Shown here one piece after another: positions 2 to 60,804 of a stretch of 64,000 nt of DNA. The first letter of the stretch is position 1. Each line of letters opens with the position of its first letter. A program made the position numbers and the translations under genes. The stretch comes from Adineta vaga (lineage: Eukaryota > Animalia > Rotifera), in NCBI GenBank assembly GCA_021613535.1, contig CP075496.1, positions 13,392,001 through 13,456,000 on the forward strand. The letters run 5' to 3'. The notes under the pieces were generated by a model. That model made no database searches and was not told the DNA's origin. It saw nothing but the letters and a program-made list of their open reading frames with translations.

Positions 2-406
2 AAGAATTTCTTCATAGATTGCTTTCTGTTTTAATAAACGTGATAATTCAGGATTGTTTGTTACAGTTGTTGGTTCACGATTGACAACATATTCGTGAAT
101 TTCACGTAAACGTAAGAATAAATATCGTAATGAACTTAATTGTACTGTTATATCGTTTAATGTTGCTTCAAAACGTGTACGTTTATCAGCAAGATTTTGT
201 GCTTGTTGTTGTTGATGATTTGGATTTGGTAGATGTGGCGTTGGACGTGTTAATTGTGTAAGCCATACACAGATTTCTGTTGGTTTACTAACTAATTCTT
301 GAACAGTTTCTTGACATTGACGAATACAAGCAAGACGTGATAATGGTTCTGATTGACCACTTGTTGGTAATTTTAATGATGATAAAGAAGAAGAAGAAGA
401 ATGCAT
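2..406 (-). CDS. MED30: Mediator subunit 30-like (3' end outside window)
   Basis: Manual translation from ATG at 406: MHSSSSSLSSLKLPTSGQSEPLSRLACIRQCQETVQELVSKPTEI...LSSLRYLFLRLREIHE, resembling the MED30 RIGQETVQDIV..TMEI and LSVLFRKLR segments. Open to the window edge. A TTTAG acceptor lies 9 nt upstream of the ATG. Confidence 0.7.
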   Translation of the reverse strand, partial: MHSSSSSLSSLKLPTSGQSEPLSRLACIRQCQETVQELVSKPTEICVWLTQLTRPTPHLPNPNHQQQQAQNLADKRTRFEATLNDITVQLSSLRYLFLRLREIHEYVVNREPTTVTNNPELSRLLKQKAIYEEIL

Positions 407-1791
407 TGAGAATATCTAAAATAATAATATTCATCAAATCTCAATAGACTAGACAACCTTAATCGTGATAAAATATGATTAAATATTGACAGTTAGATTT
501 TTTTCCTTCAACGAGAAAAAAATTCAATGGAATATTTAATGAATTATATCACACGAGCTTGATTTTCTACGATTCTGCTTACGTCATTTTGTAAGAAAAT
601 GATTTATTAATGATATTGAAAGTTTAATTACGATAATGAAAACAAGTAAATACGGAAAACGCATTAACATCAAATACAATCTTCACTATACTCAGCACGT
701 CTTTTATAGTAATTGATAATCTTCTAATTAATAACACTTCTTATTACTCTATAATTAAATAATCACGTTCTTTTTTTTTCTAGGATTAGGAAACTTTAAA
801 GAAAAGAAAAAAGAATGTGTTCAATGATTGATGTAAAATACTATTGCAGATAATTACTACCAAAATAAAAATGAACGACTTTTCTTATTTGGCGTACTTC
901 ACATTGTATTCATGTTTAAAATCGAATTTGATCTATCTCAGACAGTCTAAGATAAATATAGAAAACACTTGAGAATACACCGGTTTCATATGATTCTCCG
1001 TCTGGTAGACACGAATGACGGATTAAGATATTTCATTTCAGAATATTTACTAACGTCGAAGAAGTATCCTAAGATTAATATACCGATCCAATTCAATTGA
1101 ATCCGTATTTCATTTCAATCTATAAATATCTTAGATTATTGCGTTTGTGGAAACATACCATAAGATAAAAGTGTAAGGAACAATTTTAATACTTATGCAA
1201 AAAATTATTTATGATAGACTTAATATTTGTTAAAGTGATATTTACCTATGAAAAAAGTGCAATAATCTGTTATAAAATACTTTTCTTTGTCTGTCAAAAT
1301 TCTTTCAGGTAAAATCTTGTCAATGCATTGGTTATCTCATATTCCAACAATGAATTTATTTTCTCTAGTGACATCTGTTATATGTAATTCGGAAAAGAAA
1401 AAAAAGATAATTTAAATTTCTTCAGTATTCAAATGTATAATTTCATCATTCTAAAACATTATTTATTTTTTAAAATTTAAAATAAAAAACTTTCATTTGT
1501 CGACTTACTTACATCAACAATGGCAATGTTCATCAAAAAGAGACGAGAACAAACAAAAAATAATAATAAACGGTATTCTCTTCACTTCACTCTTCGTTTT
1601 TTTTACACATTTCTAGATCAATTTTTATGCTCTTGAAATAGGCTTATTTCTCATTGATTAACATCCTTTCTTTCTCTGTGTGTACTTTTGTGTTAATCTT
1701 TTTTTTTTGTTTGAATTCTATGAAATTTGATTGTTGATTTTCATTATCGAATATTCAATTGATCTCGCTCGATGATCATCGTTTTTTTCTA

Positions 1792-2739
1792 ATGGACTTA
1801 ACTAATAATCTAATTAATTCCAATACTACACCATCGACAACCACAACAAATCCACCGAAACGTGTTCGAATTGAAAGTGATGATTGGAGTGATAAAACAC
1901 CTCGATCACGTCTACTTGAACGTTGGAAAGAACAAGATGTATACATCGATTATTTAGAATTACGTTTACATCAATTACAACAATCGATTGACTCAAATGA
2001 ATTTATTCGTGAAAAAGAAGCGGAATGTAATAAATTAAAATCTATGCTTAATTATCGATTTTTAACGAAAACATCACAACAACAATCATTGGTAAGATTC
2101 ATAAGAATTCTGCATGAATCTTTATCCTTTATTTTCTTTCCAAGGATCAAATGCGTGATATGATGCAAACACCATCATTAGCTCGTCTTAGACAAACATA
2201 TTTAGATCCATCAATTAATCTCATCTATGGACAAATGCGTGAAGAAATTGAACATAGTAGAAAAGCACGGGATGAAGCACAAAATGAATTACAAGCTTGG
2301 CAATTTACACCAGATAGGTAAGCATTGTTTATCAACATCGAAGTATTGAAGAATTTCATGTCCTTTTTTTTCTATCATAGTAAAACTGGTAAAATGCTTA
2401 TGGCAAGATGTAAAAAACTTCTTGAAGAAAATGAACAATTAGGAAAAATCGTATCATCAGATAATGTAGCAAAATTAGAAGGTGAAATTGCATTACAAAA
2501 TCGACTTTTATCTAATATTAAAGATGCACAAACAGGTAAATCTTTCTCCTTAGAAACGAATACGATTCAATTTCACGAAATTTTCTTTAGATTATGAAGA
2601 AATTATGTTAGATATGGATAGTAATATGGATGCAATGTCGAATACATTACTTCATATGCGTCATCAATTAAACGAATCACATCGACAAATCAGTTCATTA
2701 AATGAAGAAAATACTCGTCTAAAAACTTTATGTCAGTAA
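1792..2739 (+). CDS. WTAP: Pre-mRNA-splicing regulator WTAP / Fl(2)d (m6A writer complex subunit), 4 exons
   Basis: PKRVRI...RLLERWKEQDVYIDYLE; spliced LRQTYLDPSINLI, QNELQAWQFTPDSKTGKMLMARCKKLLEENEQLGK and LEGEIALQ match WTAP. Three short GT-AG introns. Confidence 0.9.
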
Positions 2740-3563
2740 CATAAACTATGACTGCGGCTTTAAATAAAGTCAAGATTTTAATTATTAAAAAATAAAATCT
2801 AAATTTATTCAACGTTTCGATCTTTATAAGATCATTGTCAAGGATTTACAAGCTTTTTTTTTCTAACAATTATTAACATGAACTACAATTTATTAGAATT
2901 GCTGTAACTACTCAAGTCATTCTCGTACGATGGGAATCGGCCAGATCTGAGAAATTCGCGTAGTAGGACTTCAGCATCGTCTCCCAGTATTTGTTTACGG
3001 TTAGTTCATAAACATTACACCCACGTCCACCCTTACATCATTAAAAAAAATAAAATATGTATTTCTATTGAATTGAATTGATTTTTGATTGAAAACCAAA
3101 TTACAGTCGCAACTATCAAAAAGATTCTGTATCCATCATCGATGTTTCTTAGCATAATTCTAATCAAATCCACATGGTAAAAGGAGAAATCAGCACTGAA
3201 AAATTCTTCAAAACTTAACAAGGGCGGACAAGTGAATTGCGCAATTCCCAGCAGTGTGCAGATTTTCTCTAAAAGCATTGTTATATTTGAAGGTAATATT
3301 GTATACATATCAGAAAAATATCGGAAATTTCTTTTTCGTAAATTCTGTGCATACCTTAAATAGAAAAGATAACGAAAAATGTCATATGTTAAGATAATGA
3401 GCTTAAATACGTTTATTTGATACTAAAAGATTATATTCTAATGAACTATAGTTTAATACATTTGTTTAAATGAGCTCGTAAAACTATGTTTTCATTCAAT
3501 CAAAATGACCTATCTACTAACTACAATAAAGTAAACTAGAAAAGAAAAAATGTTCTTCAAAAA

Positions 3564-4979
3564 CTAAACGACATGTTCAAATTTGTAAGAAACGGTTTTT
3601 TCTTCATCAGCAGGTAAGGTTACTGCACATTTGATTGTCAAACCATCTTGTGTGCAGGCTGTGTTTGGTGTTCCTAATTTTACGGATACACCATAATTTT
3701 GAAGCTTATATTCAACTTTCACTGGACGATTTTTCTTGAAATTCTTCAAGATAACATTTACATTGTAAATTGTTTCTCTTCGTGTTTCCGCATGGAAACT
3801 ACCTCGACGGCTGCTATCATTATAAGCACGAGAAGAAACAATAGTAACATTTTCTCTATAAGTAATATCACTATCTTCACCAATTGAGAATTCATGTTTA
3901 TCTTTAGCAGCTACATTTGGTAATGATGTTTCACCAACAAGACGATCATATTCACGAATAACACAATTTCCACGAGATAAATATCGATCAGATGAGAGAC
4001 GATATGAACGTTGTGCTTTACCGCTGAATGCACCAGCACTTTGAAAATGTTTAGAAATTAAAGCGTATCGTTCAACGGTAACATGTGGTCGAAACATTGG
4101 TAAGAGATAATTCGTTTTTCCTTCGATTGAAAATGGTTTGGTGACAGTAAACATGTATAAACCAGCAACTTCTTCTGCTTTAGTAATTGTTGGTGCAGGT
4201 GACATTCCTGGTGCTGCGCCAGCCACTGAACTAGTTTCATACATGACTTCGTCACGTGCTGCACTATAGTGTTTCCAGTTGGCTCCGGAATGCATTTGTA
4301 AATTAATATCACCACCTAACAATTCAGCATGTTCAATATCAACTCTCGATTGACCATCATTTCGAATATCAGCCATTGAAATAAGAACTGCATTCTTTGA
4401 TTCATCAAATAAATTTAGTTGATATCGTGTCTTCCAGTTGAGATTTGATCGAAGATAACTTACATAAACTGCATCAGTTGTATCAAATGTAAAGTTAACA
4501 TAATATTTTGATTGTGGTGGATCATGGTCATATACAATGTGATCTGATGATGCAGTGAAAAAGATTGGATCTTTGCTGATATCTTTATCGATGAGTTTGA
4601 CCAGATTTCTTCGTTCATCGATGAGTGTTGCTTTAACGAATTTTGTTTCGGTGTTTGAAGATGATGGTGTACGAACAAAGATGTGAGCATTGTTGAGTGA
4701 TTGTTTCTTTTCGGTGACTGTTTGTTGTGTGATATTGACATTGGTACCAACGAGAGTGACAGAATCAGAACGAATATCTCTCCAATCATCTTCAGAAAAC
4801 TCGAGAGGTAATTTGCCAAGTGGCTGAACGATTTCAGCAAGATTTGAATAGATTTTAACATGTCCAAGAATACGATGGTCTGTGATATTTCCTACTGTAT
4901 TTTTCTTGAAATGAAGAAAGGCATTGCTTGTATTGAAAAACACAGCTGATGCAAACAGAAGCAGGATTGACTTCATCAT
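3564..4979 (-). CDS. Secreted DUF4139-like protein, intronless (copy 1), horizontal-transfer candidate
   Basis: 471-aa ORF with an N-terminal signal-peptide-like segment. VKIYSNLAEI, VSYLRSNLNWKTRYQL, ADIRN, LLGGDI and a C-terminal beta-rich TLPADEEKTVSY end resemble DUF4139/DUF4140 proteins. Confidence 0.65.
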   Translation of the reverse strand: MMKSILLLFASAVFFNTSNAFLHFKKNTVGNITDHRILGHVKIYSNLAEIVQPLGKLPLEFSEDDWRDIRSDSVTLVGTNVNITQQTVTEKKQSLNNAHIFVRTPSSSNTETKFVKATLIDERRNLVKLIDKDISKDPIFFTASSDHIVYDHDPPQSKYYVNFTFDTTDAVYVSYLRSNLNWKTRYQLNLFDESKNAVLISMADIRNDGQSRVDIEHAELLGGDINLQMHSGANWKHYSAARDEVMYETSSVAGAAPGMSPAPTITKAEEVAGLYMFTVTKPFSIEGKTNYLLPMFRPHVTVERYALISKHFQSAGAFSGKAQRSYRLSSDRYLSRGNCVIREYDRLVGETSLPNVAAKDKHEFSIGEDSDITYRENVTIVSSRAYNDSSRRGSFHAETRRETIYNVNVILKNFKKNRPVKVEYKLQNYGVSVKLGTPNTACTQDGLTIKCAVTLPADEEKTVSYKFEHVV

Positions 4980-7045: not shown

Positions 7046-7877
7046 TATTGCTAGTTGTTGATGTATGGTTTTGTATGTTAAGTACACATGGAACGTTTCT
7101 CTAACATATATACTACTTATGTGGGAGAAAAATATTGTTTTGTTTTATCCCATATTTTATGGAAAGACGCACAAATTGATTACAACATAAGGTTTTTGTC
7201 AACGATAATAGCTAATAATCATCAACGGAATAGGCATTTACTACGACATATTTGATGAATAACTGATGAAAAATAGAACAATATGTATGTATAGATGACA
7301 TTTTTGACAGATGTTTAAAGTCCAGTTGTTTTTCTTCAGTTATGAATAAGGACTCGATCATGCTGTATATGTACGATGGTGGTTATAAATATCTGAACGA
7401 CTGACGAATATCGATAAAAATATTGTATCTATCATTTTTGTGAAAAGGTAGAAGGATATTCATAGTGTGAAGGCTAGAAGTTACACTCTAATTCGATGTA
7501 AAATGATGCTCGTCCCACGACAAGGAGAGATGTTCTGTAGTTTGAATTTTGCTCAAAGTTATGCATACAATACATAGGAAATAAATGTAAATGTCGTAAT
7601 ATCATTGTTAAATATTACAGCACAAAATTAAAACAGAAAATTTGCATCTTTTTTCATTTACTATTGTATCACAAGTGTCAAACTTGAAAGTTGAATTCAA
7701 GTTTCAGTTTATACTGTTCTGAATTGTAAAGAATTTGTTTTGATTCTTGTAACTACGAAAGTTTTCTTTTGTGGTATCATATTTGTTGATCTAGTCTTTT
7801 TGTTTTATCTTACATTATACTTTCGTAGAGAAAGAAAAATTGAAGAATAAGTTATACCTCTGCTATCTCAACAGACA

Positions 7878-10800
7878 ATGGGACGTTTGATAACATACTG
7901 TGCTGTTGTTGTTCTTGTTCTTGTACTTCTAATACATCGTAAGTTTTGAGGATGTGAGGGAAACTTTCTATAGTTATAAAAATTCTTAAATATGAATTCA
8001 TATCAGTTTTATTAATAGTATGGAGATAATAATTGAAGAGCACGAGCCATGAGAGACATTAAGATAGATAGAAAATCAAATATCAGAATAGAGATTATGG
8101 TAACATTATTAATTGATTAACTTTTGATAGATAATGAAAAACAATAGTATGATTTTTCTCCGAAATTTTTCACAGAATCTGGTGCTGTGCAATGGCCTAA
8201 ACCTACTACTTCTTCATCTTCGACAAAGGCAATTGCTGACTTGATATCTCGTGTGCTTGATGGTGCTCCAATTGCTCGACGTTTTGATCTTTCAATCAAT
8301 GCTGATTTAGCCGTCGATGGCAAAGATGTTTTCGAACTTTCAAATAGCCCTGATTCGGGTTCAATAACTATTTCAGCATCATCCGGCGTGGCTGCTGCAT
8401 GGGGATTCAATTACTATCTCAAATATGTTGCTGATAGTTCATGTAGAAATTAATTACTATCCATAGTGTCATTTCTATATTTGATCTATTTAGTCTACTG
8501 GTCTGGCAAAAATATTCGACTCTCTGGCTCAACATTGATTCCAGTACCATCACCTATTCGAATAGTTGCAAATGATTTCTATCGTTGGTATGGTAATCCA
8601 TGTACATTTAGTTACTCATCTGTATTTTGGAACTTTTCCAGGTACGTTCTCATTTGATGAGTATGACTTTATCTTTTTTTTGTATTGTTTAATTTCTATG
8701 TCAAGATGGGAGAAAGAGATTGATTGGATGGCTATGAATGGAATCAATCTAGTTTACGCTACAACTGGAATGGAATATATTTTTAGTCAAGTCAGTATTA
8801 TTTTTCTGTTTTGAAACAAAAATTAATCAATACATATGATATCATTGTAGGTATTTCTTCGAATGGGTTTCACTCAATTGGAATTAGATGAATATTTCAC
8901 CGGTCCTGCTTTTTTAGCTTGGTAAAAAAAGAAATCATTATTCTTAGATAGATTATAATCATGTGTGTTATAATAAAAGGCTTCGTATGGGTAATCTTCA
9001 GAAACATGGTGGTCCTTTATCCCAAAGTTGGCATCAATCACAATTTCAATTAGCTAAACAAATTATCCAACGGATGACTGATATTGGAATCATACCAGTT
9101 CTACCAGCTTTTACAGGTTTTATGCCGCGTACAGCACCAAAGTACATTACTATCTTTAATAAAGACACATATAATGCTAAGAAGATATTCGTTTTAGACG
9201 TTTTCCAACTGCAAAATTCTATTATTCATCAGATTGGAATGGTTTTGGCTGTAATGATTCATGGTGAGTTTTCATATATTGAGTGCGAATTACTTAGAGA
9301 ACTCTTCATTTTAAATATTAGTTTACCATATCTTGATCCAACTGATCCATTTTTTCAACAAGTTGGAGTAGCACTTTTGAATGAAGTATGTTTATATTTT
9401 TATCTTTTAAAAATTGAAGACTTAGATATTCTTCTTCATATTAGACAGTAACTTCTCTGAATATAGTCTCACATTTTTATGCCTGTGATCTATTCAATGA
9501 AATGACACCACCGATTAGGTATGACTCACTTTGGAAACATTTTTGTTGTGCAATATATTTCATATAGTGATCTCAACTATTTGGCTGATGTCAATGCAGG
9601 AATAATTCAAACAATGCAAACAGTTGATCCATATGCTATTTGGTATATTCTCGTTTATATCAAAACAATTATTTCATGTATTATTTCTGTACATAGGGTA
9701 ATGCAAGCTTGGCTATTCCTTTCAGATTTTTGGACACCAGATCGTGTGAAAAGTTATCTGAGCAAAGTTCCTGAAGTATAAAAAGAATTCTATTCTTTTG
9801 TCTACTTTTCTAATATACATTTTCTCACATGAAAAGGGCCATTTGATCTTACTCGATCTTTTTTCCGAAGCTCGTCCACAATATTCACGTTTTCAATCCT
9901 TCTATGGTCATTATTACATATGGAATATGTTACATGATTTTGGTGGAAATAATGGTTTGTTTGGTTCTCTTGTTAATGTGACAGATGTACATATTCTACT
10001 CGATTATACTGTAGATAACCAATAGATATTATTTCTAGGGTCCACAAGCAGCCAGAACTTTTTCTGGTGAACATATGATAGGTGTTGGTATTACCATGGA
10101 AGGCATCAATCAAAATGAAATAATGTATGAATTTGCTCTTGAACAATCATGGCGTTCTCCACTCAACGAAACTGAATTGAACGATTGGTAATTCTATTTG
10201 AATACAATTTAGTCGACACATATAAATCTATAAATTTAGGTTAGTTGGATTTGTTATGCGTCGATATGCTAGTAATCAAACAATACCAAGTTCTGCTTTA
10301 TATGCATGGCAAGAATTAGGAAATTCAGTTTATCATATAAATCCTTTTCGTGTTTATTCATTGATATTACATAGACCAGCACTTGACCGAGAGCAAGGTG
10401 TAAGTGACAATGAAGTTTATATCTCTCATCTACTTGTAATTTTTATGATAGATTAGTTTCGATCTTAAAGCTCTCTTATCTGCATGGGAACTATTAGTTG
10501 ATGCATCAACTCAGTTGAATGCTGATTTATTTCGTTACGATTTAGTAGATATTACTAAAGAAGTTCTTCAATATAAATTTGCATGTGATTTTGTACAATT
10601 GATTGCTGCTTTCAATCGAAGCGATCTTTATGGTGTAGAGTAAGAAACTTACATGAGATTTGCCTGTTCATCATCTGTTGTAAGCAATCTCTTTAGAACA
10701 CAAGCAGCTATTCTGATAGATATTTTAGATGATATGGAAATGGTATTAGCTTCAGATCGTCGTTTTCTTCTTGGCAATTGGATTGCAGATGCATTACAAT

Positions 10801-51200: not shown

Positions 51201-54200
51201 ATTATATTGAAAAGAATAAAAAGATTTTCTTTGATTTTATAGTTTAAAGTAGTAAATGTCTTTCTATTAGCAAGATTTAGTGAAGAATTGTAAGTTTTTA
51301 TAAAGAATCAAAAAAGGAATTTTGATTAACTTGATTTTTATCGTTTAGATTATCATCCATTGGACTTGAAAAAGTTCAATCGGATGTTTTGGCTGTTAAA
51401 TTACTTACGCCAAGTACATTTCTTGTCGTCAATATAATGCAATTGTATTATTTTCATTCGGGTTGGATGGAACTCATAACAATGCCTAAGTAAATTTCGA
51501 AAAAAAAGAAAATAAGAGAACACTCAATGACGAATTTGTTTTTGCTTAGTGATAAGAATGTTGATGGTCGAGCAACTGGTACCATAAAAGATATTCATAC
51601 ATATGCGAAAGGTAATAGAATAATTCTCTTGATTTGATAATGATTTAAATGAAATTTTTATACAGAAAATACAGACAATCCAAATAGTCTTCAAACTCAA
51701 CAAATTTTACAAAGTAAACCAGAAACTTGGCAAGAATCGTTATATAAATTATATTTTCGAGCAAATCGTTTCTACAAACAACTTGCTTATTATACATGGC
51801 GTTTTGCTGAAATTCATTCGTTTAAATTAGTTCTATTTATTATGGTTCTTGTTTCTATTCTTCGAGTAAGACAAGTCTTTAATTTTGTTTGTTTTTCTCA
51901 TTAAAATTCGTTTTTATTTTTCCAAAAAGGTCTCAGCATTCAATGTTTCATTAATTATTTTAACAACAATTGGTTTAACATTATTACGTTTACGATCATT
52001 GATTAATTTATTAACATTAATTGCTACAGGTTTATATATTCTTGCATCGATGTGTTATCAATTGGAAATAGCTAAACAATATATTGTTCAACGAAATATT
52101 TTCGTGAGAAATTGTTCACAAGTAAATGTTGAAAATAAAAGTATTTAATAGGAAATAACTGAACTTAATTCATTTAGATTATTCCTAATGTTACATTAAA
52201 TGAAAATTTTAATACAATTCCCAATGATACAGCGAAATGGTTTGGTCTTCAATTAACATCCAATATCGGTCGATTAATTGGAGTAAAAGTTTTGGTTTTC
52301 TTTTTAATCGTATTCTTGAATTTTCTTTGTAGGTTTATATTTTATTAACAGTGGTCTTAACATTGGATGCTATTGCACGATATCGACAAAGACATCGTCG
52401 TTTATCATTATCGATTCATTTCAATGTTCATTTAGTTGAAAATCGTTTTCCAATTCTATTTGAACCATTTGCAATAAAGGATGTTGATGATGATACATAT
52501 GAATATGATATTCTTACGTATAGACAAGCAGATCAAGGCATGATTGAGTTTCTCAAATATTTATGTAATTTTATTTTCTATCGATTTGGTTTGGAGGTAA
52601 ATTATTTGATTTCTTGGTTTTTTTCTTCAAAGAATTCATCAATTATTGTGTATTTAGATATGTTATATAACAACAGTTATTGTTATTGGTATACGGCTTG
52701 ATGTTATGGCTGTTTTATATGCAGTTTGGCTTGGTATATTTCTGATTTCAAGTCGACGAACAATTCAACGTTTATGGCCTATTTATGTTTTATTTCATAT
52801 TATTGTCTTTCCATTACAATATATGAGTGTAGTGGGTGCACCACCATTTCTATGCTTTGGTTAGTAATAACAGATCAATCGAACGTGCTTTCATATGACT
52901 CAGTGATGATATATTCGTTTTTACCTAACCAATGAGATATTCATTAGAGAAATGAGGATGGAAAGAAAAACCAATAGTTGTAGACTATACCGTTCTCTAT
53001 GTTTTACTAGATGTTAGTCATCCAGAATGTAAAAGTACAAACATATTATTTTAATACTTTTGATGTTATTATTGTAGAATATCCATGGGCAAATCTAAAT
53101 CTAACTGATTGGTCACAATTGAAACGATGGCTTTATTTAGCAGATTATCAAAATCCACCGATTGCTTCACAGTTAATTGGTAAGATTTGTATAACGATAA
53201 ACTCTACGAATTTATTTTGATTTCATTTAGCTGATTTTTTTCAATTCTTATTTGCTTGTCAACAATGGCATGTATTTACATATGAATCTAATGAAAAAGA
53301 TCGTGTTTATGTTGAAGCTGGAGGTTCCAATCGTGAAATTGTTCATGATGATGATGTTTATAAAAATAATCCAACATGGGATTTCGTTACAAATAAACGA
53401 CATTGGCTTGATCATATTAAATATGCTGTATTTATGTACGGTGCATGGAGTGTTCTATCAATTGTTTATCTTGCTGGAACAACACGAATTAGTTTACTTG
53501 GTCTTGGTTATCTCGTTGCCTGTTTCTATTTTCTATGGTATGGTCAAGATTTTCTAACAAAACGATTGTCATTGATGCTTCGATTGTATGTAAAGACTTT
53601 CTTTTCATTCTATCATCTATTTCATTTCGTTTATAGATGGAATTATTTGATTTATTACTGTTTTGCGGTGGTATTTATTAAAGCATGTTTACAGGTATGT
53701 CAATCAAGAGACAAGAAATAGAAAGAACTATTTGATATTGAAGAAATGAGATATAAAACACTTTCAGGTAGTTGCGTGTCTTGGTCTTCTATCAGCTCAA
53801 TGTGCAATTGAACAGATCTTTGCTATTGCCTGTTTACAATCAGGCATTCACAGTCTCAATAATTATGATAGCACATCTCCCACAGGTTCTTTTTTTCCCG
53901 TTTATTCTATAAATATTTCTCCTTTGTCTTTTTTGGGGTTGCGAAAATATTATTTTTCTCAAGCATGCTTCTTCTTTTATTCGTAGAAGAAAATAGATAA
54001 ACGAATAGGAATTCAAATTTTGATTGTCTTACTTTGATATTTCTTTAGGTAGTCGTTTGTATCTTTCTCTATCCAAAAACATCTTGTAAAATGGAATCAC
54101 GCATGTCAACATTTTGCACGTTTGTGGATTTGTTTGTGCCATGTTTAAAATCTGAATTTAAACCTCAAACTAACTGTTCTTCATCTTATAAAAGTATAGA

Positions 54201-57200
54201 GAAATTCCAAAGTTTCATCAGTCAATTATCTATTACTCGTATTTTCTAGCTGGAACAGAACAATGTGATCGAAATGCAGCTGATGCAAGTTTTTTCATGT
54301 AAATATATCGGTTTTATTTAATAGAACAGTATTGAAGAGAAAAGATTTGATCTTTTTTTCAGGGATGGATTTTGCATGATATTTATATTATTACAAAAAC
54401 GTATATTTTCAAGTTATTATTGGGAACATATTGTCAGTGAACTTCGTTCACAAGCAAAATTAGCTAGTCAAGGTGCTGTACTTTTCAATGAATTATCACG
54501 TCAACGAATTGAAGAAGATCGTATACAAGAAGATCAAACGGTCTCGAAAATAACACGAAGCTTAGATCGTATTAAAGAACAACAATCAAAATTAAATAAA
54601 ACAGATAGTAAATCGACATCAGCACTATCGGAATCATCAGAACATTTTGAAGGTATGTTTAGTAGACAATTGTAGAGATATATAAATCGATCATTGCATT
54701 GTTCTAGCTATTCGTTCGGGTGATTATTACATGTTTGATTACGAATCGGATGAAGAAGAAGATGAAGGAAATGTAGATGAAGCAACTGTTGCACAAGAAC
54801 AGGTTGAGAATTTGCAATTAATACAAATTACTAAATGACATGAATATATATATATTTCTAGATTCTTCATGTTTTAACTGCAACTGATAAAGAAGCAGAG
54901 ACTGCAGTGGTTACTCATAGTAAATTCTATTTAAAAGAAGAAGCGACTTATTCATAAATAACTACAATCATTTTTTTTCGTTTATAGAATCTGCAACAGC
55001 ATCTTTCATAGAAACAAATGGTCAAGACATTACTTCAGTATCACCATCTTCTCCTCATCCAGTTACAACTGCAACAACGATGCCGATCTTAATGGATTCA
55101 GGAGATAATACAGCGTCAGTTGTACCAAAAGGTAAATTATTCTTCTATGTAAAAAATGATAATTGATATCTGATTTGTTACAGAGAAGAAAGGTAAACGT
55201 AAATCAATTTTGATAAAAATTCGTCTTATTGGTTGGATTATAATGGATTATTTAATTGATTTATTCACTCGTAATTCTCGAGATTATCGAGAAGTATCAA
55301 AAAAATTAGCAGAAATGAAATCCGAAGATAAAATACTTCAACAAGAACGTATTCGTGCTGAAACAAGTATTGAAACGGTAAGATTCCCTTTTCTCAATCA
55401 GTAGATTTTCATTTCATATATCTCCTTCTTTAGAATTCAGTTATCGATATCGATGAAATGGCTGGTGGTGATAGACCAAATGGAAATGGGTAAGATTCAT
55501 TTATTTCCTATCGTTGTCTTTTTCTATACAATTGTATTTATTATTTAGACATATTCATTCTCAACGTGTATCTCAATCGTTTGATTTAAGTCAACGTTCA
55601 CGTTTCTATCGTTTATTTGATTCCATATTTTATTTTATCATGTCTCGATCTGAACTTCTTTGTTATTCAGCAATGATTATCAATCATTTAACATCTGGTG
55701 CACTTTTATCTCTTCCACTTCCATTATCGATCTTTCTTTGGGCAATGTTATCATCACGTCCATCACGTAATTATTGGATTACAGTTTTAACTTATACAGA
55801 AGCAATGATTGTCGTTAAATATATCTTTCAATTTCGATTTTATCCATGGTATGCAAATCCAGTCGATACACGTCCATTAGCAGCGATTAATATTATTGGA
55901 ATTAATCGACAAGAAAATGCGGCATCAGTAGCGGATTTATTTTTACTCCTATCACTCTTTCTTCATCGATCAATCTTAAAAGTAAATAATTACAAACTAT
56001 TTTCATAATAATAAATTTCATTTCTTATTCTTTTAGCAACTTGGACTATGGAAAGCCGAACAAACTACACCAAACGGTATGTATGAAATGGAATAATCTG
56101 TTTTCTATTTCAATAATTCATATAAATAATATTTGTATATTTAGAATCTGTTGCTGTTGATACCAATGCTAGTACTACAGTTCAACAAGAAGAAGAAGAA
56201 GTAGAACCAAAAACTGAATTAGAATTTACACGAATAAAAAGGTAAATTATCTTTAAATGATTTTCTTTTTCATCTATCTAAAAAATTTGAACAGAATTAT
56301 ATTCAAAATACGGTATGATAATCTTACTTCACATAGATAAGAATAGAATATGAGCATGTTTACATCTTCTTGTAGACTCTTTCATACACTGACTCATCTT
56401 TATAACATACGAATATTTTCTTCTTTGTATCTTTAGAAATGTTTATTTTATGAAACCAATGATTAGATTTTATCGACAACTTAAACAAGCATTATTCGTT
56501 CGTGATGTTTATGCACCAATGTTCTTCTGTGATTTTATTAATATGATTATTGTCATTGGATTCTATAGTCAATTTGGTGTAAGTATCATTAAATAATAGA
56601 AATGAATTTATTTGCAAGAAAACAAAACTTCTTTTTTACAGTTACCTAAAATCTTCAGGGTAATAAATGAAATCATTAAGAATATTTGCCACAAAACTAG
56701 AATTTCATTGATTCACAACATTTCACATCTAATTTGTTTTCATTTAATTGAAGAAATATAATTGAAATTTCTTTTCTAGGAACGAGCGGGTGGTAATGTT
56801 GTTCAAACAATAAAAGAAAATAAAGTAAATATTGACAATTCATTAATAGTTATTTTATGATGAATTTTTAGGTTCCTGTCGCATTTTTGGTTATATTATT
56901 AGTTCAATTCGTTTTACTTATTATTGATCGTGCACTTTATCTTCGTCGAAATGTACGTGGTAAATTATTCTTTCAATTATTTCAAGTTATTGTCGTACAT
57001 ATCTGGTTATTTTTTATTTTACCTGGCATAACTCGAACGTAGGATGAAAGCAAATCGAATAATTATTTATTTTTCTTTAATTTTACAGGAAATTTCGTGA
57101 TAATGTTGCTGCACAATTTTGGTATATATTCAAATGTATTTATTTCGGCTATTCATCGATTCAAGTACGATTGGGTTATCCCAAACGAATAGCTGGTAAT

Positions 57201-59681
57201 TTTCTTATGAAACGATATAATTATGTCAATCAAATTCTCTATCGAATGTAAGTAACAAAAATATGTTTGACAAACTACGATAATTTCTTTTTAGTTATCT
57301 TTTATTTCCATTCTTATTGGAATTACGAACAATTATGGATTGGATGTTTACAGATACAGCACTTGGATTAACAAGTTGGTTACAATTAGAAGATATCTAT
57401 TCAAATGTTTATTTGTTAAAATGTTCAAGATGGGCGGAAGAGGTAAATTTTAGTTTAGAAGTATAAGTTGAAAATGAAAATTCTTATTCTATATATTATC
57501 GAATGTCACTTTAATTGTTGTTTATGGTATCTTATAGAAATATCCAACTAAACGTGGAGTTCCTCGTCCAAAAGCAACAAAATATGGTGTTGGTGGTTCA
57601 TTATTGGCTTTATTAATTCTTTTAATTTGGTTTCCTCTATTATTCTTTTCATTTACATCATCATTCTATCAACCAAATCCACCGAAAGAAGTTAATGTAG
57701 AAATTAAATTAGGGGGTTATTTAGTAAGAAAATCTTCCATATTTGTTATTTTTCAATTATTTTATTTCATCTCTCTTAGCCAATATATCAAATGACTGCA
57801 CAAGATGTCGATTTAGGTGCCTTTACTGAAGCAGATTACAATAATCTTCGTTCATCTATTTATTCACCAAAATTTGGACCAGCTGTCGAAGTAAACATTC
57901 TCTTTTTTTTCATTAAAAACATCTCTTAATCTATTTCTATAGGATAGTGCCTATGCTTTCCTACGTGATTTCAATCCAGCTGATATCTATTGTGTGAATT
58001 TATTCGCTACTAGTGTCAATTTATGGGAAATTAGTCAACCAATTCGTGATATTGTTGTCGATAATTTACAACGCAATGTAACTGTACCAGTACGATTTTC
58101 TTATACAATAACACGTAATCCTCCGGGTGAGGATGATGCGGAAGATATAGCCGCAGTTGTATCTGGTGAAAATATTGTGGATATAAAACCTGAAGATCAA
58201 GATATTCGTAAGGCACTTATTGAAATTTTAATCAATGGAACATTTGAATCACAAAAGAAAATGTAAAATAATTGTATCTTTAGTTTTCTTTTTCTAAAGA
58301 CAGATTTCGTTTTGGCTTTTTTTTTAGAGAATTTACAATTAGTAATTTAATGCCAAGATTTTTACATGTAAAACCAAAAGCTAAACCAGAAGGCATCGAA
58401 TCATTTCAAAACGGTAAATTATTTATAAAACTTGTGAAGATTTATTTATTGAATATATATATATCATTTAGTTTTTCAACCCGAATATCATTCGAATATA
58501 ACGATGGGTCTTAATCGAGCACGATCAATTCCAAATAGTACGGAAGTTTGGTGGAAAATGTCAGAAGATCGAACAGGTTTTAAAGTTAATCCATCATGTA
58601 AATAATGCAAATATAATATAATTGAATTTTGAATCAATCACTTGTTGAATTTCTTAGGTTTATTTTCAAATCAAGATTATCTGAGTATGATCTTTTTCAA
58701 TGATAAAATCTCACCAGCTAATATTTCATTTCTTACTCGATATGGGTAAGTCAATATTGAAATTTTTTCTTAGACAACTAGCTTTGCTCGATTACTAACT
58801 AATAAAACTAACTATTATTCACCGCATGCTGTTTATTTTGTATGTTCTTTTCTAATATGAATATGTTTTTCTCTCTCTCTCTCTCTCTTTCTTCTCACAA
58901 CAGCTTGTTCTCCTTCTTCTTCTACTTATCTTGACCAACGATCATCATTCTCTTTTGTTCATGTTCCTTTTTTTCTCTCATGTAAATTGTCTCTAGTATC
59001 ATTGGTATCTACATTTCAATTGTTTCTGTTGCTGCTTCGTTTATTCGTGGTCAACTATTTGGTACAACGAATACAATTATGTTCGATGAATTACCTCAAG
59101 TCGATGCATTATGGCATTTCTTAAACGATATTTATCTCTTACGAACTGTTCGAGAATATGAAACTGAAAATGACTTTTTCGATCGTTTAGTATACATTTA
59201 TCGTGATCCACAAGTGTTACTCTATTGGACAAGAGAAAAACCCGATTCCAAATAATTGAAAAATTCTTTTTTTGATCAGATATTTTCACATGTGCGTTTT
59301 TTTTGTTTCTCTGTATGTAGAAAAATTCACGTGTTCTTTCTTTCATAATAGTGAGAATAAGAATAAAGTTTTCAATCAATGAATTGCAGAAATAAATTTC
59401 ACTGTTTTTTTTTCTTCTTTTCTTTTCATAGGATTATTGGTTTATATACAACATTCGTCATTGTTGTTGCACGATTATTACGTACAGTATTACAAACAAG
59501 TCAAACGATCATGTTTAATGAATTACCAAGTGTCGAACGATTATGGCATTTATTACGAGATATTTATCTAGTTCGAGAACATAATATTTTACATATTGAA
59601 GAGCAATTATTTGCTAAATTAGTGTTTTTATATCGTTCACCCGAAACATTAATACGTTTTACTAAATCAAAAGTCAATTAA
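48247..59681 (+). CDS. Piezo: Piezo-type mechanosensitive ion channel, highly multi-exon, alternatively spliced
   Basis: AWSITFHS, FYRFGLE, LLQKRIFSSYY, IRSGDYYMF, PLSIFLWAMLS, IDRALYLRR, PFLLELRTIMDW (PFxxExxxxxxW motif), KYGVGG, IWFPLLFFS, IMF.ELP and LYRSPE. Exon phases were traced by eye; there is one apparent frameshift at ~50570-50615. Confidence 0.95.
53768..53885 (+). other. Piezo: Piezo mutually exclusive exon X1 (extracellular loop before the beam)
   Basis: CTTTCAG|GTA GTT GCG TGT...CCC ACA G|GT; 118 nt, phase 0 to 1; VVACLGLLSAQCAIEQIFAIACLQSGIHSLNNYDSTSPT. Confidence 0.75.
54049..54193 (+). other. Piezo: Piezo mutually exclusive exon X2
   Basis: TTCTTTAG|GTA GTC GTT TGT...TAT AAA A|GT; 145 nt, phase 0 to 1; VVVCIFLYPKTSCKMESRMSTFCTFVDLFVPCLKSEFKPQTNCSSSYK. 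Confidence 0.7.
58997..59255 (+). CDS. Piezo: Piezo alternative terminal exon A (inner helix + CTD)
   Basis: CTCTAG| phase-2 acceptor; (G)IIGIYISIVSVAASFIRGQLFGTTNTIMFDELPQVDALWHFLNDIYLLRTVREYETENDFFDRLVYIYRDPQVLLYWTREKPDSK*; AATAAA at 59362. Confidence 0.85.
59432..59681 (+). CDS. Piezo: Piezo alternative terminal exon B (inner helix + CTD)
   Basis: TTTCATAG| phase-2 acceptor; (G)IIGLYTTFVIVVARLLRTVLQTSQTIMFNELPSVERLWHLLRDIYLVREHNILHIEEQLFAKLVFLYRSPETLIRFTKSKVN*; AATAAA at 59767. Confidence 0.88.
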
Positions 59682-59781
59682 AATGAGAATCTTTGTGATA
59701 TTGTTCTTCATCATGCTTTTTCTGTTGTTTGTTATTTAATCTTAGAAAATAATCATGACTTTGTAAAATAAAAAATGTCGA

Positions 59782-60804
59782 ATGTCATCTATCTTTCAGA
59801 TGAGTGGAATAGAAAAACGTAATTGGAATGGATATACATTAGTTTTAGTAAGAATTTCTTAGATTATCTGATAGAAAATGAAGAATGTATGTTTTAGCCA
59901 TCGATTTGTCATTGTTATGTGGGACAATTGGCAGTCGATACTTTAATTAATACTTTTCATATGAAAAGTGTACGAATACTTGATTGGATGTCTGTTGAAC
60001 CGGTGATTGCTTATGATCCGTATGAAAATTCGAATCAAGAAAATTTAGCATTTGGTATTGAAGGTAAGAAGAAATGAATGAAAATATTGAAATAAATTAT
60101 TTGAATTGTAGTTTATGAAGAATCAAATTTGAAATTATTAGTTATTCAACAACGCGGAGGAATTGTTTCAGGCAAACGACAAGCTTTTGTTGATGAACTG
60201 CTTGCATTTTTTAAAAATGAACAATTAAAAGAGATTATTGTTTTAACAGCATTTAATGCTGTTGAACGAAATGATGCACAATTAACTGGGTAGGAACAAT
60301 GAAGAGAAGAAGGAAAGAAAACGAAGATGTTAATGATTGTTTTCTATTTTCAGTGATCAATTTCGATATTTATCAACCGTAGTAAATTCGAATAATGTCG
60401 GATGGATTTCTTTAGAAGAACGTCAAGATAAACATCATCATAAGGTTGTTCGTGATCGTGATCGTTATTATATTGCAGGTGGTGGTATTGCAAATCGATT
60501 ATTCTATACAGCGTAAATAAATTTGTTTGTTTTTTATAACATATTAAAATTCTCTTTTGAATCTAGACAACAAGCTCAAATACCGATTACTATTTTACTA
60601 ATGTTTACTGATATTGGACAAGAAATACAACATGCTAATGAACTATTAATTCGATTAAATCAATGGAAAAATTGGCGTCAAGTAATGTTAATTGAAAGAT
60701 GTGATATGATTTTTTAGTATTTGATTTCATAGGTTGAACGATGGCAAATGCCAGCATCTCAACGAGCATGGATTGAAACACAAACTGTTCCGCCAATTTA
60801 TTGA
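59782..60804 (+). CDS. PSMG2: Proteasome assembly chaperone 2 (PAC2), 6 exons
   Basis: GYTLVL|PSICHCYVGQLAVDTLI, PVIAYDPY, E|VY...KLLVIQQR, ERNDAQL, IAGGGIA..L, WQMPAS. Confidence 0.82.

What the first reader, a model, noticed from the sequence alone, without database searches (positions are those of the whole stretch)
58746..59681. Piezo with two interchangeable pore modules: duplicated alternative last exons encoding inner helix + CTD
Seen: one phase-2 donor (TATGG|GTAAGT, 58745/58746) is followed by two intact, homologous but strongly diverged exons, A (58997-59255) and B (59432-59681). Each has its own AG acceptor, stop codon and AATAAA. Established (mouse Piezo1 numbering recalled from memory; confirm by alignment): this segment forms the pore-lining inner helix and the cytoplasmic CTD. 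L2475/V2476 form the hydrophobic inactivation gate, K2479 confers voltage-dependent inactivation, MFEE(2493-2496) affects conductance and selectivity, and PE(2536-2537) forms the cytoplasmic constriction. Exon A has S/V, S, MFDE and PQ at these sites; exon B has I/V, R, MFNE and PE. Inference: splice or polyadenylation choice swaps the pore, giving a slowly inactivating, less voltage-sensitive form (A) and a more canonical form (B), possibly as mixed trimers. I know of no described Piezo with a spliced-swappable pore.
Basis: partly seen in the sequence, partly recalled or inferred. Interest (0 to 1): 0.92.

Follow-up and report, generated by a model that had tools for sequence, protein, structure and literature searches.

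The report
Piezo with two alternative pore exons
A rotifer gene for the touch-sensing channel Piezo carries two diverged copies of its last exon, the one that builds the ion pore; both have been kept intact for a very long time, so the animal can probably make two channels with different pores, although only one of the two splice forms has so far been seen in RNA.

Summary
After the phase-2 donor at 58745/58746 lie two homologous terminal exons, A (58997-59255) and B (59432-59681). They are 45% identical, and each has an AG acceptor, a stop codon and a downstream AATAAA.

**Conservation.** The same layout (donor, exon A, AATAAA, exon B) occurs in eight other fetched loci, seven of them distinct, plus Didymodactylos carnosus. 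Codon models give omega 0.09 for A and 0.05 for B. The part of A upstream of any usable ATG also scores 0.09, so A must be translated through its acceptor.

**Type-specific pore residues.**
- A has Ser at L2475 (20/22), no charge at K2479 and Q at E2537.
- B has Ile/Val/Leu, Arg and Glu/Asp at those sites.
- In mouse Piezo1, L2475S slows inactivation about 5-fold and L2475I speeds it about 4-fold.

**RNA.** Contigs from three studies show only the 58745>59432 (B) junction. Exon A is covered at 17-34% of the main contig's depth, only by unspliced contigs. Three spliced fragments from related taxa also use B.

**Verdict.** B is the default pore. A is very probably a rarely or conditionally used alternative last exon, but its junction is unproven. 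No paper describing this was found.

The parts
58658..58745 (+). Penultimate coding exon of the Piezo gene (...NDKISPANISFLTRY + GG of a split Gly codon). It ends in a phase-2 donor.
   Evidence: RNA joints 58597>58658 and 58744/5>59431/2 in runs X11, X9 and X17. Translation. Conserved in all related loci.
58746..58751 (+). Shared 5' splice site GTAAGT. Read through unspliced, the frame stops at once (GGG TAA), giving ...TRYG*.
   Evidence: Sequence. GG|GT(A/G/T/C)(A/C)GT in all nine loci.
58779..58791 (+). Conserved intronic element TAGCTTTGCTCGA about 30 nt downstream of the donor, in an intron that otherwise cannot be aligned. Candidate splicing-regulatory element; function unknown.
   Evidence: Exact 13-mer at the equivalent place in L009, L010 and L015, with near copies in L013 and L016. 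One match in the window against 0.04 expected. No exact copy in the fetched C1 ohnolog loci (L003/L006), whose last intron is only about 55 nt.
58997..59255 (+). Exon A: alternative terminal coding exon for the inner (pore-lining) helix and CTD, with its own stop TAA at 59253-59255. Its acceptor (TAG|T) has a weaker pyrimidine tract than B's in 6 of 9 loci.
   Evidence: Orthologues in 9 loci with an intact frame and conserved acceptor. Omega 0.09. Covered by unspliced RNA contigs at depth 5.9 to 18.9. Pyrimidine fractions.
59362..59396 (+). Two AATAAA signals (59362-59367 and 59391-59396) in the 176-nt spacer after exon A. Putative poly(A) signals of the A isoform.
   Evidence: An AATAAA lies 49 to 139 nt after the A stop in 8 of 9 loci, within a similar AATAATAAA context. 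X9 contig 58717-59389 ends about 22 nt after the first signal. That is suggestive only.
59432..59681 (+). Exon B: the terminal exon used by default, encoding the inner helix and CTD, with stop TAA at 59679-59681. It has a strong pyrimidine tract and a TAG|G acceptor.
   Evidence: Junction 58745>59432 in three RNA studies at the depth of the main contig.. Omega 0.05. Spliced fragments from other taxa, P0186-P0188.
59682..59772 (+). 3' UTR of the B isoform. RNA contigs end at 59733-59745. An AATAAA lies at 59767-59772.

Best explanation
This is the 3' end of a Piezo gene in a bdelloid rotifer. The organism is probably Adineta vaga, which is an inference. The last exon encodes the pore-lining inner helix and the cytoplasmic CTD. 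It was duplicated in tandem before the living bdelloids diverged, and both copies have been kept as alternative last exons.

The single phase-2 donor at 58745 can join either of two exons:
- Exon B (59432): strong acceptor, the default, and the form seen in bulk RNA.
- Exon A (58997): weaker acceptor, own stop, own AATAAA about 110 nt downstream.

The choice between splicing to A with cleavage after it, or skipping A and splicing to B, exchanges the whole pore module while leaving the roughly 2,400-residue mechanosensing blade and cap unchanged.

Shown:
- the anatomy;
- its conservation;
- protein-level purifying selection on both exons;
- lineage-fixed differences at gating and permeation sites;
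- use of the B junction;
- transcription across A.

Inferred:
- that the 58745>58997 junction is made, probably in few cells or in particular conditions;
- that A-channels inactivate more slowly and with less voltage dependence (Ser at the L2475 gate position, no charge at K2479);
- that the two differ in permeation (acid at E2495 in A only; E2537 is Q in A).
For: 1. **Anatomy and homology.**
2. **Conserved layout.** A search with exon A found 32 ORFs that are 64-95% identical to it, from ENA, Logan and JGI contigs. The eight loci fetched from other organisms (seven distinct) and D. carnosus all show the same order: donor GG|GT, exon A with an AG acceptor (TAG|T in eight, CAG|A in D. carnosus), an intact frame and its own stop, then exon B. 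An AATAAA follows A in 8 of 9 loci.
3. **Selection.** Under GY+F3X4 on 9 taxa, omega is 0.092 for A (2dlnL 288 against omega=1), 0.093 for its first 27 codons (2dlnL 83), and 0.053 for B. Median pairwise NG86 dN/dS is 0.16 for A, 0.14 for B and 0.16 for the constitutive penultimate exon.
4. **Splicing is required.** There is no in-frame ATG between the upstream stop and exon A in 7 of 9 loci. In the window a TAA lies 5 codons upstream. The selected inner-helix codons can therefore be translated only after splicing from an upstream phase-2 donor, and the nearest is at 58745.
5. **Type-specific residues.**
   - L2475: Ser in 20/22 A; I/V/L in 14/14 B.
   - K2479: S/T/Q in 22/22 A; R in 14/14 B.
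   - E2495: D/E in 17/22 A; N/Y/T in 14/14 B.
   - E2537: Q/T in 21/22 A; E/D in 14/14 B.
6. **Published mouse Piezo1 data.** The inactivation time constant is 11.9 ms in wild type, 62.2 ms in L2475S and 2.8 ms in L2475I. K2479 sets the voltage dependence of inactivation (PMC6349400). E2495/E2496 affect selectivity, conductance and block (PMC7796548).
7. **Transcription of A.** RNA covers exon A in three studies at 17-34% of the main contig's depth, while a 201-nt intron of the same gene has depth 0.
8. **Regulatory hints.** There is a conserved intronic 13-mer next to the shared donor. A's acceptor has the weaker pyrimidine tract in 6 of 9 loci. Both are typical of regulated exons.
Against: - No contig from the three RNA studies carries the 58745>58997 junction.
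- The contigs over exon A are colinear with the genome: X11 58759-59441, X9 58717-59389 and X17 58950-59256. The last includes 47 nt of intron upstream of the A acceptor.
- The three spliced fragments recovered from related taxa all join to B. A further search with the shared upstream part found only unspliced genomic ORFs.
- The coverage over A could be retention of an unusually long (686 nt) intron.
- The ohnologous Piezo copy on contig C1 does without exon A; its last intron is about 55 nt.
- One of the nine loci (L014) lacks an AATAAA after A.
- The functional predictions carry single-residue results from mouse Piezo1 into a module that is only about 40% identical to it.
Confidence: 0.65

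Rival explanations
1. The conserved event is intronic polyadenylation or retention. Transcripts that fail to splice at 58745 and end after exon A encode a Piezo that stops at ...TRYG* and has no pore. That product would be a decoy, a dominant negative, or a way of turning the gene down. Exon A would matter mainly as the carrier of the poly(A) site.
For: Every contig over exon A is unspliced. X9 contig 58717-59389 starts in the penultimate exon, runs through the donor, and ends about 22 nt after the AATAAA at 59362. The frame stops immediately after the donor. The AATAAA after A is conserved in 8 of 9 loci.
Against: This does not explain protein-level selection on exon A, which has omega 0.09 with synonymous sites diverged. 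It does not explain the conserved AG acceptor in the right phase, or the retention of Piezo motifs at about the same score to mouse Piezo1 as exon B. This event may well coexist with the main explanation.
Confidence: 0.12
2. Exon A is translated from a transcript of its own, made from an internal promoter or by spliced-leader trans-splicing onto its acceptor. The product would be a free inner-helix/CTD or CTD-only mini-protein that modulates Piezo trimers.
For: In X17 only 58950-59256 is covered and the first 200 nt of the intron are not. X11's contig starts at 58759 rather than in the upstream exon. Spliced-leader trans-splicing operates at this locus: the downstream gene carries the leader at 59798. 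An ORF MFDELPQ...DSK (59079-59255) exists.
Against: The 27 codons upstream of that Met are under the same constraint (omega 0.093). In 7 of 9 loci they have no in-frame ATG before them. No loose end with the leader sequence was reported at 58997. The contig ends are at low depth (about 6) and could be coverage dropouts.
Confidence: 0.08
3. Exon A is a relic. It was once an alternative exon, is no longer used in this species, and survives as an intact-looking frame inside the last intron. The gene would make only the B pore.
For: Only the B junction is seen in three RNA studies. The ohnologue has lost exon A altogether.
Against: The frame is intact over 86 codons in a 30% G+C genome, where about 8% of random codons would be stops (my estimate). 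The window's copy is 81-84% identical to those in L009, L010, L013 and L015, with its acceptor and stop preserved. Selection is strong across the whole clade. A very recent loss of use in this one species cannot be excluded from sequence alone.
Confidence: 0.1

Closest known systems
Tandem-duplicated exon substitution (mutually exclusive or alternative homologous exons), well known in ion-channel genes; reviewed for human genes in PMC9741552, PMC8373072 and PMC9013439 (titles and abstracts seen)
   Same: A tandem exon duplication gives two homologous, same-phase exons of which one is used per transcript. The events are ancient, both copies are under purifying selection, and the protein is fine-tuned in one region.
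   Different: Here the pair is the terminal exon. Exclusivity is enforced by each copy's own stop and poly(A) signal rather than by steric, frame or RNA-pairing mechanisms. No docking/selector pairing was found. Use of the second copy is not yet seen in RNA.
Known Piezo splice variants: Piezo1.1 (exon 30 skipped, lateral plug), Piezo2 exons 33 and 35 (PMC12490864), and C. elegans PEZO-1 isoforms that differ in the N-terminal blade (PMC12951647 abstract)
   Same: Alternative RNA processing of a Piezo gene is used, or proposed, to tune inactivation, permeability and sensitivity. Heteromeric channels of two isoforms have been proposed for Piezo1/Piezo1.1.
   Different: Those variants add or remove intracellular loops or blade repeats. 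None replaces the inner helix and CTD that line the pore. I found no paper describing a swapped pore module.
Engineered mouse Piezo1 inner-helix mutants L2475S, L2475I and V2476S, and the K2479 voltage-dependence determinant (PMC6349400)
   Same: The natural A/B difference falls on the same positions. A has Ser at 2475 and loses the charge at 2479. B has Ile at 2475 and keeps Arg.
   Different: The mouse data are single substitutions in a mammalian channel. The rotifer modules differ from mouse and from each other at more than half of their residues, so the direction and size of the effect are predictions.
Paralogue-level diversification: vertebrate Piezo1 versus Piezo2, and the bdelloid ohnologue on contig C1
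   Same: Different pore modules with different kinetics exist in one organism.
   Different: Here two pores share one gene, one promoter and one mechanosensing body. The ohnologue on C1 keeps only the B-type module.

Membership tests
Piezo mechanosensitive channel (C-terminal pore module) | Significant match to the Piezo C-terminal profile (Pfam PF12166, its last ~80 positions) above the curated cut-off | tested here: met
   A scores 87.2 bits and B 109 bits against a cut-off of 26.9, both on profile positions 219-298. Upstream exon 57943-58260 matches positions 21-113 of the same profile.
Piezo mechanosensitive channel (C-terminal pore module) | End-to-end alignment with the inner helix and CTD of solved Piezo structures, keeping the MF and P(E) constriction motifs | tested here: met
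   A residues 1-81 align to mouse Piezo1 2466-2546 at E 7e-18. B aligns at E 2e-19. M2493, F2494, E2496 and P2536 are kept in both types.
Piezo mechanosensitive channel (C-terminal pore module) | Forms a mechanically gated cation-conducting trimer | not testable with these tools
   Needs expression and patch-clamp. No structure or complex prediction was run.
Tandem-duplicated alternative last exons | Two homologous exons in tandem with acceptors in the same phase after one donor | tested here: met
   45% identity, E 8e-25. Both acceptors complete the split GG|N glycine codon. The same holds in 9 loci.
Tandem-duplicated alternative last exons | Each exon has its own stop codon and its own polyadenylation signal | tested here: met
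   Stops at 59253-55 and 59679-81. AATAAA at 59362, 59391 and 59767. An AATAAA follows A in 8 of 9 loci. Actual use of a cleavage site after A was not tested.
Tandem-duplicated alternative last exons | Both exons under purifying selection at the protein level in several lineages | tested here: met
   Omega is 0.092 for A and 0.053 for B. Both reject omega=1, with 2dlnL of 288 and 364.
Tandem-duplicated alternative last exons | Both splice junctions observed in RNA | tested here: inconclusive
   58745>59432 is present in X11, X9 and X17. 58745>58997 is not listed in any. These are contigs, which drop rare variants.

The most novel reading that the evidence does not exclude
Swappable pore modules may be a recurrent, unrecognised feature of protostome Piezo genes rather than a rotifer oddity.

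Tandem terminal inner-helix/CTD exons, each with its own stop, also occur elsewhere:
- in an unidentified AT-rich eukaryote (L017);
- in a probable mollusc contig with three modules in a row (L021).

In addition:
- the Mya arenaria gene model WAR12852.1 holds two modules fused;
- a Timema gene model holds a duplicated inner-helix exon.

Under this reading, animals tune Piezo inactivation kinetics, voltage dependence and permeation cell by cell, by choosing a pore exon on a constant mechanosensor. Gene predictors routinely hide this by fusing or dropping the extra module.
Probability: 0.35. Interest if true: 0.85.

Novelty: new variant of a known kind. Interest (0 to 1): 0.72.

Why it matters
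Piezo inactivation kinetics decide how a cell filters mechanical stimuli, and human disease mutations act through them. All known natural Piezo isoforms change loops or blades, never the pore-lining helix.

A gene that keeps two pore modules would be a natural experiment in Piezo gating:
- One module has Ser and the other Ile at the hydrophobic inactivation gate.
- They also have opposite states at the voltage-dependence lysine and at two acidic permeation sites.
- The differences have been held for the whole history of bdelloid rotifers.
- Evolution has, in effect, already made and kept the L2475S-like and L2475I-like channels.

The idea can be tested directly with chimeras.

There is also a practical lesson for annotation. 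Gene predictors fuse such modules, as in the D. carnosus and Mya arenaria models that hold two modules in series, or they drop one. Databases therefore currently hide this arrangement.

Tried and rejected
1. **Degenerate junction patterns in JGI metagenome contigs.** The A junction gave 0 hits, but the B-junction positive control also gave 0. The scan is uninformative.
2. **Search for spliced A-forms among 5.8 billion proteins.** I used the D. carnosus model P0033 (region 1-113) and the shared upstream part of P0187. Only B-spliced fragments (P0186-P0188) and unspliced genomic ORFs were found. The tools leave out the window's own species, and candidate lengths are capped, so longer spliced ORFs could not appear.
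3. **Dating the duplication with a tree of 75 modules.**
   - A and B each form starred clades.
   - A falls next to a group that includes the first module of L017 (support 88).
   - The AU test does not reject A+B as one clade (p 0.51).
   - With 83 columns the order of events is unresolved.
   - Only presence in D. carnosus dates the pair to before the bdelloid radiation.
4. **RNA pairing between the conserved intronic 13-mer and sites near either acceptor (a Dscam-like docking/selector).** Duplex energies were no better than for shuffled motifs, and the best partners were not positionally conserved. The inverted repeats in the window are AT-rich chance matches.
5. **A conserved CAG|ATAT about 25 nt after the A stop as a third acceptor.** The frame opens for 35 codons in the window but closes at once in L009 (by eye). 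Rejected as coding.
6. **The D. carnosus model (pen-A-B in one protein) as evidence for a two-module protein.** Rejected. Exon A there ends ...KKQ followed by TAG, and the predictor used a GT overlapping the stop.
7. **The X9 loose end at 59426.** It maps to C4:520273, so it is a chimeric contig formed through a pyrimidine run.
8. I reran it without that sequence, taking the mouse numbering from the ungapped alignment.
9. **No joined (spliced) protein model.** All searches were exon by exon or used proteins returned by the tools.
Full report
**What is there.** The penultimate coding exon ends TATGG|GTAAGT at 58745/58746 with two bases of a glycine codon.

Exon A follows 251 nt downstream:
- acceptor AG at 58995-58996;
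- coding 58997-59255;
- stop TAA at 59253-59255.

Exon B follows after a 176-nt spacer:
- acceptor at 59430-59431;
- coding 59432-59681;
- stop at 59679-59681.

Their translations are 45% identical, E 8e-25. Both match the last 80 positions of Pfam PF12166 well above the cut-off. Both align end to end with residues 2466-2546 of mouse Piezo1 and with Piezo2 and invertebrate Piezo structures, at E about 1e-18 to 1e-20. It is right at every site named.

**The organism.**
- The window lies on contig C4 of a 100.8-Mb assembly in six contigs.
- RNA contigs of the downstream gene carry ...CTTACCAAG joined at 59798. That is the 3' end of the rotifer spliced leader GGCTTATTACAACTTACCAAGAG (PMC3795323).
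- The closest named protein is from the bdelloid Didymodactylos carnosus.
- Six chromosomes with ohnologous pairs 1-3 and 4-6 are described for the Adineta vaga AV20 assembly (PMC8494291).

I infer that the window comes from A. vaga or a very close relative.

**RNA.** I laid the contigs of four runs on 56500-60300. X11, X9 and X17 come from three studies of the same organism, and their contigs skip every intron of the gene, so they are RNA.
- All three carry the junction 58745>59432 (exon B) in the main contig, at depths of 34, 57 and 18.
- None lists a junction 58745>58997.
- Exon A is nevertheless covered in all three, at 17-34% of the main contig's depth, by contigs colinear with the genome: X11 58759-59441 (depth 5.9), X9 58717-59389 (18.9) and X17 58950-59256 (6.2).
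- A 201-nt intron of the same gene (56579-56779) has depth 0 in all runs.
- X9's contig ends about 22 nt after the first AATAAA behind exon A. X17 covers exon A but not the first 200 nt of the intron.

These details hint at processed, A-containing RNA, but they do not show the A junction.

Among database proteins, three spliced fragments from related taxa (P0186, P0187, P0188) all read ...FLTRYG-IIGLYTTF, which is the B junction. No A-spliced fragment turned up. These searches omit the window's own species and cap the length of candidates.

**Conservation.** This is the strongest evidence. A search with exon A found 32 ORFs that are 64-95% identical to it, on contigs from ENA, Logan and JGI. 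That is far closer than A is to B.

I fetched eight such loci, seven of them distinct, plus the D. carnosus scaffold. All nine loci, counting the window, have the same anatomy:
- the penultimate exon ending GG|GT;
- an intron of 188-314 nt (about 1.4 kb in D. carnosus);
- exon A with an AG acceptor (TAG|T in eight, CAG|A in D. carnosus), an uninterrupted frame of 83-86 codons and its own stop;
- a spacer of 87-189 nt (about 1.3 kb in D. carnosus);
- exon B with a (T/C/A)AG|G acceptor and its own stop.

An AATAAA in a similar AATAATAAA context lies 49-139 nt after the A stop in 8 of 9 loci.

A codon model on nine taxa gave these values:

| Region | omega | 2dlnL against omega=1 |
|---|---|---|
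| Exon A | 0.092 | 288 |
| Exon A, first 27 codons | 0.093 | 83 |
| Exon B | 0.053 | 364 |

Median pairwise dN/dS is 0.16 for A, 0.14 for B and 0.16 for the constitutive penultimate exon.

In 7 of 9 loci there is no in-frame ATG between the nearest upstream stop and exon A. In the window a TAA sits five codons upstream. The selected inner-helix codons can therefore be translated only if exon A is spliced to an upstream phase-2 donor, and the one at 58745 is the obvious candidate. This is an inference, but a strong one.

Regulatory hints:
- An exact 13-mer, TAGCTTTGCTCGA, is conserved about 30 nt after the shared donor in an otherwise unalignable intron. There is one match in the window against 0.04 expected, at the same place in L009, L010 and L015.
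- There is no exact copy of it in the fetched loci of the ohnologue that lacks exon A.
- A's acceptor has a poorer pyrimidine tract than B's in 6 of 9 loci.

**History.**
- The genome holds two further Piezo terminal modules.
- The copy on C1 is 90% identical to B. Its last intron is only about 55 nt, with no trace of exon A. Given the paleotetraploidy of bdelloids, one ohnologue kept A and B and the other kept B alone.
- D. carnosus has both exons. From memory, it is an early-branching bdelloid, so the pair predates the bdelloid radiation.
- A tree of 75 modules recovers A and B as separate well-supported clades. It puts A beside the first module of an unidentified eukaryote (L017) that also has two tandem modules.
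- An AU test cannot reject A and B as sisters (p 0.51). Whether the duplication is older than bdelloids is therefore open.

**What the swap would do.** Across 22 A-type and 14 B-type modules the differences at functional sites are fixed by type:

| Mouse site | A-type | B-type |
|---|---|---|
| L2475 | Ser in 20/22 | Ile/Val/Leu in 14/14 |
| K2479 | Ser/Thr/Gln in 22/22 | Arg in 14/14 |
| E2495 | Asp/Glu in 17/22 | Asn/Tyr/Thr in 14/14 |
| E2537 | Gln/Thr in 21/22 | Glu/Asp in 14/14 |

M2493, F2494, E2496 and P2536 are kept in both types.

Published mouse Piezo1 data bear on these sites:
- L2475S lengthens the inactivation time constant from 11.9 to 62.2 ms, and L2475I shortens it to 2.8 ms (PMC6349400).
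- K2479 sets the voltage dependence of inactivation (PMC6349400).
- E2495/E2496 affect calcium selectivity, conductance and block (PMC7796548).

By analogy, the A pore should inactivate more slowly and with less voltage dependence than the B pore, and the two should differ in permeation. B is not simply the canonical form, because it has lost the E2495 acid that A keeps. All of this transfers results from single substitutions in a channel about 40% identical. It is a prediction, not a result.

**Comparison with what is known.** Tandem exon duplication followed by use of one copy per transcript is a known way of tuning proteins, including ion channels (PMC9741552, PMC8373072, PMC9013439). Piezo genes are known to be alternatively spliced (PMC12490864; PMC12951647):
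- Piezo1.1 lacks exon 30, which encodes part of the lateral plug.
- Piezo2 varies at exons 33 and 35.
- C. elegans PEZO-1 isoforms differ in the N-terminal blade.

None of these replaces the inner helix and CTD. Five full-text searches found no report of a Piezo with alternative pore exons or of rotifer Piezo. I rate it a new variant of a known kind.

**Beyond rotifers.**
- The D. carnosus protein CAF1285104.1 contains pen-A-B in series. This is a gene-model artefact, made by using a GT that overlaps A's stop.
- The Mya arenaria protein WAR12852.1 also contains two modules in series. I did not inspect its DNA.
- A 6.5-Mb contig (L021, probably a mollusc) has three terminal modules in tandem. 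The two I read in full each end in their own stop.
- A Timema model holds a duplicated inner-helix exon.

So the arrangement may be widespread and hidden by annotation.

**Verdict.** Exon B is the default pore. Exon A is a conserved, selected coding exon that must be spliced to be read. That makes alternative last-exon use the best explanation (confidence 0.65), with the A junction still to be seen.

The rivals are:
- intronic polyadenylation giving a pore-less protein;
- an independent A transcript;
- a recently disused relic.

Each leaves part of the evidence unexplained.

Noticed in passing
G000:C1:1432577-1432816 (-), loci L003/L006: This is the ohnologous Piezo copy. Its terminal exon is 90% identical to B, but its last intron is only about 55 nt and it has no exon A. 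P0120, from another taxon, shows the same short in-frame intron. One ohnologue kept both pore modules and the other kept only B.
   Followed up: partly
L021:2170-2445, 7096-7347, 8127-8375: A 6.5-Mb ENA contig (37% G+C, probably a mollusc; the first module is 73% identical to Mya arenaria module 1) has three Piezo terminal modules in tandem. The last two each end in their own stop and differ mainly in the inner helix. The Mya arenaria protein WAR12852.1 (P0035) carries two modules fused in series.
   Followed up: partly
L017:2929-3009, 3867-4205, 4411-4671: An unidentified AT-rich eukaryote (ENA metagenome contig, 12.3 kb) has a penultimate exon followed by two tandem terminal modules, each with its own stop. 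The first carries a YIYRDP motif like exon A and groups with the A clade (support 88). The organism was not identified.
   Followed up: partly
P0037 (Timema genevievae CAD7588074.1), residues 269-398: This insect gene model contains a partial first inner-helix segment followed by a complete inner helix + CTD. It looks like a duplicated inner-helix exon, possibly a mutually exclusive pair, merged by the gene predictor.
   Followed up: no
L019 (D. carnosus CAJNOK010018596.1) 162-3412; protein CAF1285104.1: The deposited gene model joins penultimate exon, exon A and exon B in one protein by using a GT that overlaps A's TAG stop. It is an annotation artefact that hides the alternative-exon structure.
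   Followed up: yes
window 59798-59800: An X17 contig carries ...CTTACCAAG before 59798. This matches the 3' end of the rotifer spliced leader, so the downstream gene (ATG at 59800) is SL trans-spliced only about 55-65 nt after the ends of the Piezo B-isoform contigs (59733-59745). The spacing is operon-like.
   Followed up: partly
window 59275-59285 and equivalent places in L009, L010, L011, L013, L015: A conserved pyrimidine run followed by CAG(A/G)TAT lies about 20-35 nt after the exon A stop, in the putative A 3' UTR. It is not coding, since the frame closes in L009. Its function is unknown.
   Followed up: partly
window 59432-59510 (first 26 codons of exon B): Synonymous divergence among orthologues is much lower here than in the rest of exon B (median dS 0.37 against 1.0; tree length 5.1 against 12.5 substitutions per codon). 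This suggests an added nucleotide-level constraint such as exonic splicing signals.
   Followed up: no
window 53768-54193: Another first-stage note (s1-484778) proposes a mutually exclusive exon pair in a blade loop of the same Piezo gene. I did not lay reads there, and a quick ORF listing was not informative.
   Followed up: no
window 59426; G000:C4:520273-520302: An X9 contig leaves the locus at 59426 and continues in sequence that maps 12.9 Mb away on the same contig. It is a chimeric assembly through a pyrimidine run, not a splice.
   Followed up: yes
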